From positions 124,001 through 188,000 of the forward strand of contig NW_026933720.1 in NCBI RefSeq assembly GCF_032062105.1: DNA of 64,000 nucleotides, in the 5' to 3' direction. Shown piece by piece: positions 28,536 to 61,350 of this stretch. Position numbers and translations under genes: made by a program. The stretch is from Saccostrea cucullata (lineage: Eukaryota). The notes under the pieces are model-generated. The model worked only from the letters and a program-made list of their open reading frames with translations, was not told the origin of the DNA and searched no databases. Positions within the stretch are counted from its first letter, which is position 1. Each line of letters begins with the position of its first letter.

Positions 28536-29100
28536 ATGAACTACAACTCTGACGTAGCTACCGTCCTGTAAGTAAATAAAGCATTTTTAATGAAAAAAAT
28601 GAAATGAGTTTGAAAGTTTATCTCAATTAAAATTAAGAAATATTATTTTATACTTCAAAAGATACATAATAACGCTGGTTCCGTTTGTGTTGCTGGTCAC
28701 GTGTATCATGCTTGCGTGTTGCTGGGACAGGTTTGGATGTAAAAAGAAGGCAGACAGTGGGCAGAGACCGACAATCAATGTAAGATATAAAAAACAAATA
28801 ACTTTTGCTATAGATGAATAAATCATGCGCAAAACTTACATTGTGTTACAGAAATTTAATTCCAGGAAATCTTTTTTGTAGGACAGACTTTATTTTGTAA
28901 GTAATGAAGTGAATGGATTATCTATATGTGATCCGCCACAGTCCCCTGCAACTGGCTACAACTCCTGTTACGAAGATTCACCTCCACCTTATAACGAGGT
29001 CCAAGCTTTAAGTGAGGAAGACATACCGCACACAGCGTTCATTAACCCTTTAACTAACCAAGAGTGGGTGTCAGCGAGTTCTAGCGTACACTGGGTATGA
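28536..29100 (+). CDS. Small single-pass membrane protein with PPPY motif, subfamily 1 copy A, 122 aa. Exons 28536-28567, 28662-28779, 28882-29100
   Basis: GTAAG donors and AG acceptors join into an open frame: MNYNSDVATVLYIITLVPFVLLVTCIMLACCWDRFGCKKKADSGQRPTINDRLYFVSNEVNGLSICDPPQSPATGYNSCYEDSPPPYNEVQALSEEDIPHTAFINPLTNQEWVSASSSVHWV*; exon lengths identical in the paralog. Confidence 0.82.
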
Positions 29101-31020
29101 TTCTACACCAAAACTGTCAACACAGATTATAACGATACTATATTTACAGGTATTCATCAGGGAATGAGAAATATCTAGCGTATTTAATTTAGGAAAATAT
29201 GTGTCTATGTTTGTATTGTAATTATGTTTTTGTTGTGAATTTTCAACTGTTTTTCTGTTCAAAATGTTTCACTAGTAATATTTCTAAACATGATACACAC
29301 TATAAAGTTCCTTCATCTTGATACCCCATTATTATATTAAATCATGTTAAAATCAGTAGGAAGATCATTTAATCCACAGCTGCTTGCCTCTCAAAATTTC
29401 AGTGGTAGACTCAGGCGCCTAGAAAGATTAAGCACCCTCTGTAGGAGGCCGATCACACAACCTATGTATTAGGTAGACAAAACATACTGTAGTCATCCTC
29501 ATTTTTAAAAAAAACAAAGGCTTAATAATTGAGATAAAACACCCTCGGACTATTTTTTTTAATTTCACGATCTTGACGAGGAGCGCACTGCGGGTGTGAC
29601 CGGTCGGCAGGGGATGCTCACTGCCTGCTCCTATTTTATATTGTTGTTTGGACTTTGGAGCTTGAATACTGTTCGTATCTATCTCTGTTTTTTGCTTACA
29701 AGGTTATGAAAACGACGTTACGAAAACTCAGTATTTAATTTTTAAGGATGTTGTTGACATTTTTGCAGTATCAATATATCTGTCAATAGCCTGCTTTGGT
29801 TCTAAAAATGATAATATTCGGAGACTGCTCTTTATCATAAATCGATAAGTTGGGAGATGTAGGCAGCAGGTGATAGCAGGATATTACTTCATAATTCGTT
29901 TATCATACAATAATCATACAATTTAAATCTTAGTTGGTTCTTTTCGTCTATAGTCAGAATAACATCGTAATCTATGTCTGGTAAAGTATTTCTTTTTGGG
30001 TATTTGCATGATTTGGATACCTGCCAAAACTGAATTAAAAACCACCCAGACATATTTACATTGAGAAAAATCCTTTATATAGCTTAATATCATTTTAAAG
30101 AGGGCTTCATTGTTCAGCAAAATGTAAGGAAGAAGTAATAAAAGAAAACGTAAATAATTTCTCTCGGTATTTTGTACTACAGTGAATTGTGTTATTTTCA
30201 ACTTGAAAACTAAACTTGTTATATCATTGGGAAAGTTAATTGTCAAAGTGATAAGTTATAAGAGTTTATTTATTAATCAGATGGAGAATAGTATTTCTCT
30301 TTGTTCACCTTATATCAGTCTGTTTGGGTATAATTTTGCCATCATTCGATTTTGATATTTAAATATTTCCTGATAAACTTCATCTTATATTGAACGACAA
30401 ATTTCCTCTCGTCATTAGAAAATATTTTCCTTGATGCCACAGAAAAAGATGATTACGAATCAGGCAAAAAATAATCTATCAAAATAATTTCAAAACAATT
30501 AAAATGAACGAAAAGACGCTTTTATCAAGACTTCATTGTTATTTTTTTGAAACTGATAATTTAAAATCATGTGTATAATTATAGATATAAGTAAGTGTTT
30601 CAAAGCATCTTTAAATATTTGATATTTAAAAAATATTTAATTTCATTATATGGATAAATTATGATTTTCTGGTAATAAACAAATACTAGTACATTTGCTT
30701 CTGACTCAATTGTTTTTTTGGAAGGTGCCAAATTATTAATTTTTTTTTTTTTTCATATTTGAAATCCTTGCAGGAAAATAAATTTCGCTAGGATATATAG
30801 TGCGTGTCGCTGTGTCTTATGCATATAAATTAGTTTGCAACTTTCCCAGTTTTATTGGATTCTGATATAACAATAATTCACTTTGATACGTATACATCAA
30901 TATAAAAATTCACTTTGTTTAGAGACTATAAATTTTTTAAGAATGTTTCTTAATGAATAAAACTTATTACTTTTTAAAAGTTACTGGTATCTATGCGTAT
31001 GAGAATAAACTTGATTTTAA

Positions 31021-58110: not shown

Positions 58111-58664
58111 TAACAGTTTTAATTATTTTTTAGTGTTTCTAACAAAACCGTCCATGTAGTTTTTAGTATACATACGAGGTAAGATATTGGGATAAAACGC
58201 ATTCATGCATAATCATCTCTTTTCTTCACTTTTACGCCTTTACTTATGCCCATTTGAACTCTGCATAGTTATTATTCGCCCCTCATGAAGTCCGTGATAT
58301 TTTAAAACTATATGCAGACTACACGATAAACATTTTTGTGAGATGGATCTGTACACATGGAATTTAAGCATCATTGGATGAAAATCGGATGGCTAAGCAA
58401 AATTATATTTACCAGCCTATAGTATATTCTGGTAAATAGTGGTAGTATTCATAAGAATTCCTTAATATGATTGTAATCCTAATTTTCAATCAGAATATCA
58501 GAATAAAAAAATAAAACATCTCTTTAATTTCAAGGTCAAAGAACTTGGGCGTACAATCAATTTTTTTCTATCCAATTTTGCTTATGAACACAAAAGGGCA
58601 AAATGGACAAACTCTCCCCTTTCTTTTTCAATAGACCACTGCCTAAGACTATACAATAAGAATA

Positions 58665-61350
58665 AACTTAAATTTTGAGCATCTTGAGTTTTATTTTTCA
58701 TACATGTTCTACTTTTGCATAATTTTAAATACAAAACGCATGATAAAAGATTTAATAGTTTTTTTTCAAAATTAGTTTAGAAAATACATGTATACTCATT
58801 TGAAAATTTTACTTAAGATCGTTATTTTTAAGCTAGAATTGCATTAATGTTTTCGTTTCACATGACAAAGTTTGTGACAAGGTAAGCTTTGTCATTAAGG
58901 TTTATTATTACAACTGCTTTTAGAAGAATTTAGTTTATTCCTCATGAGGTTATCTAAAATATACACTTTTGTTACAGAAATGTAATGTTACAGAAATGTA
59001 AATGGTGTCGATTGTATCAAGTTAGCACAATTTTATTTTTTCCTGGAGAACAAAGAAAAAATGCAAAATATAGTTCGTTTAACTGAGGCAATTCTCAATT
59101 TTGATTCAGGTTTTGACCCATAAAAAAATATTGTAAAAGAAATATATATATATAACTGATTTTTAGAATAGGCAAAATATTGAAAACTGGGTTATTGAGT
59201 TATATTTTATGTAACAAAAAATCCACCTTGGAAACCCATCTCTACATTGAAAGTTATTCGTGCATGCAGCACTTCCTGATGCATTGTGGCCACACTGTTA
59301 CACGGAGAAGGACAATCTTCAATGTTAGTATAAGAAAAACTTTCATTTCATCAAAATGTTCTGAACCATAATTATTCACGAACATTTGAACATTTTCCAT
59401 TTTTTCAGTTTTGATTTACATTTGAATCGGGCGGAAAAGGTTAAATTTTGCAAGAAAACTGGAATGGAGAACTACTATTAGTAAGTACGCTTGTGAAGAT
59501 AATCTGTGACTAGAAAATATCCTTTTTATCTTCCGTTAATGAATATCTTGACAGTCAGTTGGAGAGTGTATTTATCATAAATGAAGTTAATAGAAACTAC
59601 ATAAATTATCATTTTGCAGTGGAATCGGAGTTGGAATCCTCCTAATTAAGTTGTTGCTTTGTATGTGCATCTGTGGCATTCGCGCTAACAGAAGAGAACA
59701 CCAGCGAACATATCGCCGATATATTCTGACAGTCCCAGGAAGAGGCCAGATTCTCAGTGTACCGAATACCGGACAAACGCAAGACAATGTGAGTAATAAA
59801 CCTAAAATATTGATAAAAAGTTTATTTTTAGAAAAAAGTTTTAGATAAATCTACTATTCTAATCCTTTCAACCAAGGTTTTCTTTTCTTTTTCTTTAAAA
59901 AAAAAACGCCCTGTTTTTACGCTTAGTATTAGATCTATGTCGTGGTTAAAAAAATATTTTATTCCATCAAAAGGTCTACAGGAAACTATTTGTGCAATAG
60001 CAATTTTTTTCCAGATTTAAAAGTTTTCATCATTACAAGTATATACATATTATTTTTAACTTTTAGGACAGGGCATCGATTGTGAAAAACGAGGAGATAC
60101 CACAAGCATATCCCCCCGGGATGCCTCCCCCATATACGTATGCAGATCTCCCCAACCTCAATAGTGGACAACCCTCAAGAGTTGTCTGAGGACCATATAA
60201 TGTTAACAGACACATAGAATCTCTATATTTATTACCTCACTATATTTACTCACAAAAAATATATTTGGGCAAGAATTAGATTCATCCCTTATAATTTTAT
60301 TTTAAATTCATTAGTCAACTATGGGTGTAAAATTGCGTTACTTTTTATGAGTTCAAATTTGCCGCTCAATAGAACAATGGTAGTGACGGAAGTGGTGGGA
60401 AGTGAGATGCCTAGTGATGTGATATGTGCACCTCTTTCTGATGCATTATATTTCTGACATATAATAAAGGACTGTTTTCATGAAGAAATGAAGTTAACAT
60501 TTTATTTCATGTATATTATACTTTGTTGACATGCGCATTGTTTCTACAAGACATATTTAGAGGATGGTGTTTTTTTTCAAACATTTACTTATTTAACTAA
60601 AGATAAATACACCACTTTCATAAAGTATTATTTATGTAATTATCATCATAAAGAAAATAAATGGTACTCATACTTTTCATTTAATATGAAATTTTTGTTT
60701 ACATGTTTACTGTTCATTTAACTATTTACATTCTATAACTGGCATAGAGATTGGACACAAATCCAAAAATCTAAATTTATTTAACTCTCATCATTTTCTG
60801 TACTCATTATACCTGGTGAGAAAGGAAACCAGGTGGGTAGATTAAAACTATTTTGAACTAGTCTGCACATGGGGAAGAAAAAAGACTGCATTGTTATAGG
60901 CTTATATACCTTCAAGTGTTGATTTCACACATAACATCTAATATTACATTATAAGGCTAGGCTATTATTTGACAATGTATGAAAAACACCAAATAGACGA
61001 TCCAAAGATATTTGTCTAGTCTTATCTATTTTCCAGGGGAATTTCAAGAAAACATTTATAGGTCAATCGGAAGTGTATTTTTTTTAAAGACTCATGTGCA
61101 GAAAAAAAACTTTCTCGTGAGCAGAAGATTGATGTATTTTTGCAATATTTTCAGTCTTTTTTTCTCAAGCATTTCAAGCTTCTCAAATAAAAGTTCATTT
61201 ATATAGGAATCGACTTAAGGGTCCTCAAGTTAACATCTAATTAGATTCTAAGACTTCAAGATTGTCCGTTTGATTTTCAGTTCTCTTTTGATTCTTTTCT
61301 ATTCTCTTGTATTATTGAGATGACCTTTATTATGTAATAATAAATAATAA
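58665..61350 (+). repeat. Segmental duplication 2, unit B (PY-motif gene 4)
   Basis: Colinear with 41260-46015, lacking the Kolobok-type and mariner-type insertions. Confidence 0.85.
59464..60189 (+). CDS. Small single-pass membrane protein with PPPY motif, subfamily 2 copy B, 102 aa. Exons 59464-59480, 59620-59788, 60067-60189
   Basis: MENYYYGIGVGILLIKLLLCMCICGIRANRREHQRTYRRYILTVPGRGQILSVPNTGQTQDNDRASIVKNEEIPQAYPPGMPPPYTYADLPNLNSGQPSRVV*; the only coding indel relative to copy A is 3 nt. Confidence 0.82.

What the first reader, a model, noticed from the sequence alone, without database searches (positions are those of the whole stretch)
28536..60189. Hidden four-gene family of micro-sized type III membrane proteins with a PPPY motif (candidate Nedd4/WW-ligase adaptors)
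Seen in sequence: four three-exon genes (122, 122, 103 and 102 aa) that the ORF track recovers only as fragments. Each has no signal peptide, a 5-10 aa N-terminus, one hydrophobic segment ending in Cys (CIMLACC or MCIC), a basic stop-transfer patch (KKK or NRR), a PPPY motif with a tyrosine-based YxxV/YxxL signal (PPPYNEV; PPPYTYADL) and a terminal V/I. The two subfamilies barely align, yet share intron phases (2 then 0) and the same exon 2/3 junction N|DR (AAT|GAC AGR), which suggests common ancestry. Established knowledge: the TM + palmitoylatable Cys + PPxY architecture occurs in WBP1, VOPP1, PRR7, PMEPA1, Shisa-like proteins and Commissureless, several of which recruit Nedd4-family E3 ligases to membrane receptors. 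Inference: a lineage-specific, expanding set of minimal receptor down-regulating adaptors with no ectodomain.
Basis: partly seen in the sequence, partly recalled or inferred. Interest (0 to 1): 0.8.

Follow-up and report, generated by a model that had tools for sequence, protein, structure and literature searches.

The report
Small oyster membrane proteins with PPPY
Four tiny single-pass membrane protein genes of the hooded oyster carry a PPPY docking motif for WW-domain ubiquitin ligases; they are real but already annotated as uncharacterized proteins, and they look like genus-restricted members of a known class of short PY-motif membrane proteins.

Summary
The sequence observation holds. Four + strand genes with canonical GT-AG introns (phases 2, then 0) encode 122, 122, 103 and 102 aa proteins. 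Each has a 6-12 aa N-terminus, one membrane helix ending in Cys, a basic patch and one PPPY.

They are not hidden. The window is Saccostrea cucullata.
- A1 and A2 equal RefSeq LOC134239092 and LOC134239093 exactly.
- B1 and B2 are annotated as one gene, LOC134239061, with four isoforms. Two are B1/B2 exon chimeras. Three carry a B1-only 44-aa N-extension that is not conserved.

The B type has two intact tandem copies in S. echinata. These share the exon anatomy and show dN/dS 0.33-0.44. PPPY, a membrane-embedded Lys and a 13-residue block are invariant. A profile search of 1.84 billion representatives found nothing else.

The A type was seen only in S. cucullata and is weakly constrained (dN/dS 0.74). 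A-B homology has no statistical support. No Pfam family reaches its cut-off.

Best reading: Saccostrea-restricted members of the known class of short transmembrane L/PPxY proteins (Comm, Rcr1/2, PRRG4) that engage Nedd4-type ligases. This function is untested, and no RNA data could be reached.

The parts
28536..28567 (+). A1 exon 1 (ATG, 10 codons + 2 nt; donor GTAAGT)
   Evidence: product identical to P0001 = LOC134239092
28662..28779 (+). A1 exon 2: membrane helix, Cys cluster (C25, C30, C31, C37), KKK patch; ends AAT
28882..29100 (+). A1 exon 3: disordered tail, PPPY at 28981-28992 (PPPYNEV), conserved C-terminal block, stop
34787..34818 (+). A2 exon 1
   Evidence: product identical to P0002 = LOC134239093
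34913..35030 (+). A2 exon 2 (membrane helix, Cys, KKK)
35132..35350 (+). A2 exon 3, PPPY at 35231-35242 (PPPYDEV)
41923..41988 (+). B1 5' exon, the part NCBI reads as coding (22 codons of the 44-aa N-extension). Conserved as DNA in B2 and S. echinata but not as a reading frame, so probably 5' UTR
42077..42159 (+). B1 exon carrying the conserved start: leader 42077-42142, ATG at 42143, 5 codons + 2 nt, donor GTAAGT
42299..42467 (+). B1 exon 2: membrane helix with GxxxG and an embedded Lys, MCIC, NRREHQR basic patch; ends AAT
42751..42876 (+). B1 exon 3: invariant DRASIVKNEEIPQ block, PPPY at 42811-42822, C-terminal PSRVV, stop
59409..59480 (+). B2 exon with start codon (ATG at 59464); no in-frame upstream ATG
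59620..59788 (+). B2 exon 2; also used after B1 exon 1 in NCBI isoform X3
60067..60189 (+). B2 exon 3, PPPY at 60124-60135; also used after B1 exon 2 in NCBI isoform X2
22112..30988 (+). Copy 1 of the tandem duplication that carries A1. It is interrupted by a LINE-like insert at about 23130-26619 that copy 2 lacks
31636..37339 (+). Copy 2 of the tandem duplication, carrying A2
41262..42913 (+). B1 duplication unit (about 75% identical to 58666-60227, the B2 unit)

Best explanation
These are real protein-coding genes of Saccostrea oysters. There are two tandem pairs, A1/A2 and B1/B2.

Each encodes a roughly 100-120 aa membrane protein inserted N-out/C-in without a signal peptide. Almost nothing lies outside the cell. 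Each has one membrane helix whose cytosolic end carries probably acylated cysteines and a basic patch, followed by a disordered cytosolic tail built of short linear motifs.

The central motif is a single PPPY with a YxxPhi at or next to its tyrosine. The most likely mechanism is that PPPY docks WW domains of Nedd4-family HECT ligases, which this genome encodes. The protein, and probably a membrane partner held through the helix (in B: an invariant Lys in the bilayer and a GxxxG face), is then ubiquitinated and sorted to endosomes or lysosomes.

This places them in the functional class of short transmembrane L/PPxY proteins (Commissureless, yeast Rcr1/Rcr2, PRRG4, and more loosely WBP1/PRR7 and PMEPA1).

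Shown: gene structure, intactness, topology signals, motif conservation across two species, purifying selection on B, and absence of detectable relatives outside Saccostrea.

Inferred: expression (from NCBI models only), acylation, WW binding, and adaptor versus substrate role.
For: - Exact agreement of the models with NCBI proteins.
- Two intact B copies in S. echinata with the same 17-nt first coding exon, the same phases and the same N|DR junction.
- B dN/dS is 0.33-0.44 between species. Exon indels are only 0, 3 or 6 nt while introns carry many gaps, and the nonsynonymous deficit is significant (p = 0.004 and 0.001).
- PPPY, the membrane Lys, MCIC, the block DRASIVKNEEIPQ and PSR-x-V are invariant in all four B copies.
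- PPPY occurs nowhere else in the window, with 0.14 expected.
- Topology signals: charge -2 to 0 before the helix and +2 to +5 after it.
- AlphaFold models show one helix (residues 2-42 or 4-42) and pLDDT below 50 for nearly all of the remaining tail.
- WW exons lie next to HECT exons on contigs C11781, C10361, C18071, C2290 and C1037.
- Sub-threshold Pfam matches all fall on architecture analogues: Comm 17.0, WBP-1 14.8 and 15.2, RCR 14.1 bits.
- Atlas feature neighbours include TMEM52, BEAN1 and PRR7/WBP-1.
- The literature defines this class, notes its very low conservation outside the motifs, and describes an extended PY motif followed by acidic and hydrophobic residues (GLPSYDEAL in Comm). 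A1/A2 resemble it with PPPY[N/D]EVQAL (PMC5578492; PMC7401822).
Against: - No RNA run was listed and no transcript-type contig encodes these proteins, so expression and the splice junctions rest on NCBI's models alone.
- There is no binding or localisation evidence of any kind.
- Each protein has only one PY motif. From my own knowledge, activating adaptors such as Ndfip use several, so a substrate role is as likely as an adaptor role.
- For the A pair neutrality is not rejected overall (dN/dS 0.74, p = 0.28). No A-type relative was found outside S. cucullata.
- No curated family model reaches its cut-off.
Confidence: 0.5

Rival explanations
1. The PPPY tails bind WW domains of proteins other than Nedd4-type ligases, such as Yorkie/YAP, WWOX, Kibra or MAGI. 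The proteins would then act as membrane anchors or sinks for such signalling proteins rather than as ubiquitination adaptors.
For: PPxY is the generic ligand of group I WW domains. The genome search returned 32 WW-domain exon matches on many contigs, most of them with no HECT match on the same contig. From my own knowledge, WBP-1, whose model gives a sub-threshold hit, was first found as a YAP WW ligand.
Against: The combination of membrane anchoring, a YxxPhi at the PY tyrosine and acidic/hydrophobic residues after it is the pattern described for ligase-linked membrane proteins such as Comm, PRRG4 and IFITM3. Nothing in the sequence points to a specific non-ligase partner.
Confidence: 0.15
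2. They are small accessory or regulatory subunits of a membrane complex, in the manner of stannin, MLANA, TMEM52 or FXYD/KCNE-type single-pass partners. Their function would lie in the membrane helix and the other conserved tail blocks. PPPY would only tune their own turnover.
For: In B the most conserved elements are not only PPPY. A Lys inside the bilayer, MCIC, NRR-x-H-x-R and the 13-residue DRASIVKNEEIPQ block are all invariant across species. In A the 24-residue C-terminal block 98-121 has 0 nonsynonymous and 3 synonymous changes. Atlas neighbours include TMEM52, MLANA, MYCT1 and stannin.
Against: The Atlas scores (0.79-0.92) are in the range that shuffled sequences reach 4-10% of the time, and Pfam models of those families give no hit at E <= 10. 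PPPY is as invariant as the other blocks.
Confidence: 0.2
3. Some or all of them, especially A1/A2, are young and weakly constrained or non-functional open reading frames. Gene prediction keeps them because they splice cleanly, and PPPY is a by-product of a proline-rich tail.
For: For A1/A2, dN/dS is 0.74 and cannot be distinguished from 1 (p = 0.28). The flanks upstream of A are more alike (90-97%) than the exons (85-94%). There is no A relative outside S. cucullata in the word-index searches, and no RNA evidence could be reached. S. echinata Be1 is not called as a gene.
Against: Both A copies keep 369 nt of frame with no indel, while their introns (about 195 nt) carry 15 gap columns. The C-terminal block of A is constrained (p about 0.01). 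B is under clear purifying selection in two species. Two unrelated-looking families both place PPPY at residues 82-87.
Confidence: 0.15

Closest known systems
Short transmembrane L/PPxY proteins as grouped by Justice et al. 2017 (Drosophila Commissureless, yeast Rcr1/Rcr2, vertebrate PRRG4; PMC5578492, PMC7401822)
   Same: They are small single-pass proteins with a cytosolic tail carrying L/PPxY. Cys residues lie in or at the membrane helix (noted for Comm2 and CYYR1). A PY motif is followed by acidic and hydrophobic residues: Comm has GLPSYDEAL, A1/A2 have PPPY[N/D]EVQAL. Conservation outside the motifs is very low. The ligase partner is of the Nedd4/Rsp5 family.
   Different: The Pfam models Comm and RCR score only 17.0 and 14.1 bits against cut-offs of 27 and 27.8. 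There is one PY motif instead of two or three. The ectodomain is only 6-12 residues (PRRG4 has a Gla domain). No cargo is known.
WBP-1 family (PF11669: WBP1, VOPP1, PRR7)
   Same: Membrane helix followed by a proline-rich tail with PPxY. The sub-threshold alignment covers the stretch from helix to PY in B2 and in the S. echinata protein. PRR7-like clusters are among the Atlas neighbours of A1.
   Different: Scores are 14.8 and 15.2 bits against a cut-off of 28.1, and there is no hit for A1, A2 or B1. The model finds nothing over cut-off in the whole genome. From my own knowledge, WBP1 and VOPP1 have a signal peptide and a Cys-rich ectodomain.
IFITM3 N-terminal PPxY / endocytic tyrosine
   Same: PPxY is bound by NEDD4, and the same tyrosine is part of an AP-2 sorting signal, with palmitoylated Cys next to the membrane (PMC8618861). 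The logic matches PPPY-N-E-V in A and PPPY-T-D-I in the S. echinata B copies.
   Different: The fold and topology are unrelated and there is no sequence similarity. IFITM3 is a ligase substrate, not an adaptor.
Orthoreovirus p10 FAST protein (PF07204)
   Same: A small membrane protein with a helix followed by Cys and a polybasic patch. It is the best Pfam score for B2: 17.0 bits for exon 2 alone and 17.8 bits for the whole protein.
   Different: It scores below the cut-off of 21.4. The match covers only the helix and the basic patch. From my own knowledge, p10 needs a roughly 40-residue ectodomain with a fusion loop, whereas B has 6 residues outside the membrane. I rejected this as a compositional resemblance.

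Membership tests
Short transmembrane L/PPxY proteins (functional class; Comm/Rcr/PRRG4) | Small protein with one membrane helix and the tail on the cytosolic side | tested here: met
   One hydrophobic segment, charge rule N-out/C-in; AlphaFold shows a single helix plus a disordered tail. Topology is predicted, not measured.
Short transmembrane L/PPxY proteins (functional class; Comm/Rcr/PRRG4) | Conserved L/PPxY in the tail | tested here: met
   PPPY is present in A1, A2, B1, B2 and both S. echinata copies.
Short transmembrane L/PPxY proteins (functional class; Comm/Rcr/PRRG4) | PY-dependent binding of a Nedd4/Rsp5-family ligase | not testable with these tools
   Only the presence of WW-HECT loci in the genome was shown.
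Commissureless (PF15957) | Match to the family model at or above 27 bits | tested here: not met
   B2 scores 17.0 bits. A1, A2, B1 and the S. echinata protein give no hit. Nothing in the genome is over cut-off.
WBP-1 (PF11669) | Match to the family model at or above 28.1 bits | tested here: not met
   B2 scores 14.8 and the S. echinata protein 15.2 bits; there is no hit for A. Nothing in the genome is over cut-off.
RCR (PF12273, yeast Rcr1/Rcr2) | Match to the family model at or above 27.8 bits | tested here: not met
   A2 scores 14.1 bits; the others give no hit.
TMEM52 (PF14979) | Match to the family model | tested here: not met
   No hmmscan hit at E <= 10 for any exon or whole protein. The only signal is Atlas feature scores of 0.91-0.92 for A1 and 0.79 for B1 exon 2, which are leads at best.
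Shisa / CYYR1 | Cys-rich extracellular N-terminal domain | tested here: not met
   The N-terminus before the helix is 6-12 residues long and has no Cys.
NDFIP1/2 | Three membrane helices and several PY motifs | tested here: not met
   One hydrophobic segment and one PPxY per protein.
One four-gene family (A and B homologous) | Significant sequence or profile similarity between A and B | tested here: not met
   BLASTP gives no hit for exon 2 and E = 0.024 for exon 3. Shuffling gives z <= 1.4. hhalign probability is 0.5%, with 12 aligned columns at the exon 2/3 junction.
One four-gene family (A and B homologous) | Shared gene structure and position | tested here: met
   Same strand, within 32 kb, three coding exons, phases 2 then 0, junction N|DR, PPPY at residues 82-87. 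This is suggestive, not proof.

The most novel reading that the evidence does not exclude
A Saccostrea-specific, fast-evolving cluster of minimal PY-motif membrane proteins. The tandem duplicates share intron phases, so that read-through transcription can mix exons between copies (B1 helix with B2 tail, B1 start with B2 helix and tail). This would give a small combinatorial set of ligase adaptors whose helices select different membrane partners, possibly tied to the intertidal or immune biology of rock oysters.
Probability: 0.12. Interest if true: 0.55.

Novelty: new member of a known kind. Interest (0 to 1): 0.3.

Why it matters
If the PPPY tails do recruit Nedd4-type ligases, these would be among the smallest members of that adaptor/substrate class and the first described in molluscs. 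They would give a handle on ubiquitin-dependent control of surface proteins in oysters.

The case also shows how quickly such proteins diverge. B is already only 58-68% identical between two congeners and invisible beyond the genus. This cautions against reading 'no homologue' as de novo origin.

The practical value is modest. The genes are already annotated, the class is known, and the function is untested.

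Tried and rejected
(1) RNA evidence. One search for sequencing runs with 28300-35600 listed none.

(2) Transcript-type contigs encoding exactly P0001, P0002 or P0005: none is on record.

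(3) A word-index search with the open frame around B1 exon 2 found nothing. The cause turned out to be that the cluster representative is 146 aa, outside the length range, not that the gene is unannotated.

(4) Pfam exon by exon and on whole proteins: nothing over cut-off.

(5) Solved-structure sequence search with both family profiles: only chance-level hits, E 0.13-0.3.

(6) The fusion-protein (p10) reading was rejected as a helix/polybasic resemblance.

(7) NCBI's 44-aa N-extension of B1 was rejected as the conserved start. B2 has no in-frame ATG there, and the S. echinata copies have stops 4 and 10 codons before the ATG.

(8) A PDZ-ligand reading of the C-termini (HWV, RVV) was considered and set aside. 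Position -2 is H or R, which by my own knowledge of the motif classes fits none of the canonical classes.

(9) I tried to reach the S. echinata genome through the locus handle to look for an A-type gene; that genome is not in the collection.

(10) Earlier notes of the scan held nothing on this place or on these words.

(11) Steps left out. The joined 103-aa B1 model and the joined Be1 model have no stored reference and were sent to no search tool. They were searched exon by exon by reference. Joining was done only inside local scripts for translation and dN/dS.

Full report
**What is there.** The window is AT-rich eukaryotic DNA (GC 0.33, no N). It is contig C15857:124001-188000 of a 1.17-Gb assembly. 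Protein names returned by the searches identify the organism as the hooded oyster Saccostrea cucullata.

PPPY occurs four times in the six-frame translation of the window. All four are on the + strand, inside open stretches at 28.9, 35.2, 42.8 and 60.1 kb. About 0.14 occurrences are expected from base composition.

Reading the DNA around each one and extracting exons by script gave four models with canonical GT..AG introns:
- A1: 28536-28567 / 28662-28779 / 28882-29100, 122 aa.
- A2: 34787-34818 / 34913-35030 / 35132-35350, 122 aa.
- B1: 42143-42159 / 42299-42467 / 42751-42876, 103 aa.
- B2: 59464-59480 / 59620-59788 / 60067-60189, 102 aa.

In all four the first intron is phase 2 and the second is phase 0. 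Exon 2 ends AAT and exon 3 begins GAC AGR.

**They are not hidden.**
- A word-index protein search with A1 exon 3 returned two 122-aa NCBI/UniRef proteins, LOC134239092 and LOC134239093. Their sequences equal my A1 and A2 models exactly.
- The B genes were missed at first. An exhaustive HMMER search with the B exon-2 profile over 1.84 billion representatives then found them.
- NCBI annotates B1 and B2 together as one gene, LOC134239061, with four isoforms. By exact reconstruction from window exons:
  - X1 is B1 with a 44-aa N-terminal extension.
  - X2 is the same N-terminus plus B1 exon 2 joined to B2 exon 3, implying a 17,599-nt intron.
  - X3 is the B1 start exons joined to B2 exons 2-3, implying a 17,460-nt intron.
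  - X4 is B2 alone, identical to my model.
- The chimeras stay in frame because the duplicates share intron phases.
- B1 has no AATAAA or ATTAAA within 960 nt of its stop, whereas B2 has one 274 nt downstream. This fits read-through, but it is inference.
- From my knowledge of NCBI's pipeline, alternative isoforms are normally built only on transcript evidence. I could not check this. No RNA run was listed and no transcript-type contig encodes these proteins.

**The start of B.** The 44-aa extension comes from an ATG at 41923 in a 5' exon (41923-41988) spliced to 42077. Several facts speak against it as the conserved start:
- B2 has GTG at the corresponding place, a frame-shifting length difference, and an in-frame TGA with no ATG after it.
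- Both S. echinata copies have stops 4 and 10 codons before their ATG.

The upstream exon is conserved as DNA and is probably a 5' UTR.

**Relatives.**
- The exhaustive B search found one further protein, a 100-aa uncharacterized protein of Saccostrea echinata (P0004, XP_061165332.1).
- Its locus (L009) holds two tandem copies. Be2 (10001-10629) is the annotated one. Be1 (746-1385) is intact but not called.
- Both copies have a 17-nt first coding exon, phases 2 and 0, and the N|DR junction. A VWA-domain gene lies downstream, as in the window at 63.4 kb.
- Between species the proteins are 58-68% identical and dN/dS is 0.33-0.44. Exon indels are 0, 3 or 6 nt, while introns carry 15-108 gap columns. 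The nonsynonymous deficit is significant (p = 0.001-0.004).
- Invariant in all four B copies are M-E-x-Y-x-Y-G-I, a Lys in the middle of the helix, MCIC, NRR-x-H-x-R, the 13-residue block DRASIVKNEEIPQ, PPG-x-PPPYT and PSR-x-V.
- Copies within a species are closer to each other (dS about 0.25) than to any copy in the other species (dS 0.46-0.74). Exon 3 is 98% identical between the two S. echinata copies. This means either gene conversion or parallel duplication.
- No other protein among 1.84 billion representatives reached E <= 0.001.
- In the oyster's own genome, six-frame searches find only the window's two A and two B copies.

**The A pair.** Word-index searches with exon 3 and with the aligned pair found only the two S. 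cucullata proteins. The exhaustive search could not be repeated for A.

A1 and A2 lie in a tandem duplication, about 22.1-31.0 kb to 31.6-37.3 kb. A LINE-like insert is present only in copy 1. Evidence on constraint is mixed:
- The exons are 88-90% identical and indel-free. The introns are about 76% identical, with 15 gap columns.
- The upstream flank is 90-97% identical, more alike than the exons.
- dN/dS is 0.74, which cannot be distinguished from neutrality (p = 0.28).
- Constraint is visible only locally. Residues 98-121 have 0 nonsynonymous and 3 synonymous changes (p about 0.01).
- PPPY and the Cys/KKK stretch are kept.

A is therefore either a young, fast-evolving gene pair or only weakly functional.

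**Are A and B one family?**
- BLASTP finds nothing for exon 2 and E = 0.024 for exon 3.
- Shuffling gives z <= 1.4.
- hhalign gives 0.5% probability. Its only aligned stretch is 12 columns that straddle the exon 2/3 junction, with 6 identities.

Common descent rests on position, orientation, exon count, phases, the N|DR junction and the matching place of PPPY (residues 82-87). It is plausible but unproven.

**Architecture.**
- Each protein has one strongly hydrophobic segment and no second one.
- Net charge is 0 to -2 before the helix and +2 to +5 after it.
- There is no N-glycosylation sequon.
- Cys residues sit at the cytosolic end of the helix. B also has a GxxxG.
- AlphaFold models built on the small alignments give one helix (2-42 or 4-42) and pLDDT below 50 for almost all of the rest of the tail. 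The Atlas's own model of A1 is similar (pLDDT 0.56).

This fits N-out/C-in insertion without a signal peptide and a disordered, motif-bearing tail.

**Comparison with known families.**
- No Pfam model reaches its cut-off. For B2 the scores are p10 17.8 (cut-off 21.4), Comm 17.0 (27) and WBP-1 14.8 (28.1). The S. echinata protein scores WBP-1 15.2. A2 scores RCR 14.1 (27.8).
- WBP-1 and Comm models find nothing over cut-off anywhere in the genome.
- Atlas feature neighbours of A1 (TMEM52, MLANA, MYCT1, BEAN1, PRR7) score 0.86-0.92, a range that is a lead only.
- Solved-structure searches give chance hits.
- Membership in any curated family is thus not met, but every weak signal points to the same architecture class.
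[quoted passage not shown] Conservation outside the motifs is remarkably low. Comm has an extended motif GLPSYDEAL, whose acidic and hydrophobic residues after the tyrosine are shared with PRRG (PMC5578492). A1/A2 read PPPY[N/D]EVQAL.
- Rcr1 and Rcr2 bind Rsp5 through their PY motifs (PMC7401822).
- IFITM3 shows the same overlap of a NEDD4-binding PPxY with an endocytic tyrosine (PMC8618861).
- The genome encodes the proposed partners. WW exons lie next to HECT exons on several contigs.

These are Saccostrea-restricted, already annotated but uncharacterized members of the known kind 'short single-pass PY-motif membrane protein'. I put WW/Nedd4-ligase engagement at about 0.5. Whether they act as adaptors for a partner or are only substrates is open, because each has a single PY motif.

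The conserved Lys in the B helix and the invariant non-PY blocks suggest a specific partner and further functions.

Interest is modest (0.3). The class is known, the genes are annotated, and nothing could be tested functionally. The exon mixing between tandem duplicates is the most unusual element, and it needs RNA evidence.

The joined B1 (103 aa) and Be1 models have no stored reference. They were searched exon by exon by reference and sent to no search tool. Joining was done only in local scripts.

Noticed in passing
window 42159|59620 and 42467|60067 (NCBI isoforms X3 and X2 of LOC134239061): The public annotation joins exons of tandem duplicate B1 to exons of B2 across about 17.5 kb, giving in-frame chimeric proteins. 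The shared intron phases make this possible. B1 lacks a nearby polyadenylation hexamer.
   Followed up: partly
window 41810-41988 and 59160-59323; L009 about 490-585 and 9740-9833: The 5' exon and promoter-proximal stretch of the B genes is conserved as DNA between the duplicates and between species, about as well as the coding exons. Its reading frame is not conserved. It may hold regulatory signals.
   Followed up: partly
L009:746-1385 (S. echinata): An intact second B-type gene (102 aa, canonical splice sites) lies 9.2 kb upstream of the annotated one and is not listed among the called genes. Its exon 3 is 98% identical to that of the annotated copy while exon 2 is only 77% identical, which suggests local gene conversion.
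   Followed up: partly
window 23130-26619: A LINE-like retroelement (endonuclease and reverse-transcriptase ORFs, + strand, broken into several frames) is inserted in copy 1 of the A duplication and absent from copy 2. It therefore inserted after the duplication.
   Followed up: partly
window 19657-22198 (+), and 31636-32559: Exons of a flavin-containing monooxygenase gene (Pfam FMO-like, positions 36-527 of the model) lie just upstream of A1. The duplication unit begins inside its last coding exon (22112), so a fragment of the FMO 3' end is repeated upstream of A2.
   Followed up: no
window 46000-55100 and 56208-57545: Between B1 and B2 lies about 9 kb of satellite-like DNA. Units of about 148/296 bp are nested in repeats of about 1.25 kb, each with a CACGTGCATGCACGTG-rich head. 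A separate 433-bp tandem array of 3.1 copies follows.
   Followed up: no
window 63368-63712 (+); L009:17142-20629: A VWA-domain gene follows the B genes in both Saccostrea species, so synteny is conserved.
   Followed up: partly
window 8231-8671 (+): An open frame matches the N-terminal region of the prolyl 4-hydroxylase alpha subunit (28.9 bits). It is probably an exon of a P4HA gene.
   Followed up: no
G000 contigs C2290/C13287 and C11781/C10361: Pairs of contigs give identical or near-identical WW/HECT match scores. Together with an assembly size of 1.17 Gb in 23,869 contigs, this suggests uncollapsed haplotigs. No second copy of this window's A/B locus was found.
   Followed up: no
window 10549-11021 and 62800-63270: A 470-bp dispersed repeat, 88% identical and in the same orientation, flanks the whole region. 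It is probably a transposable-element fragment.
   Followed up: no
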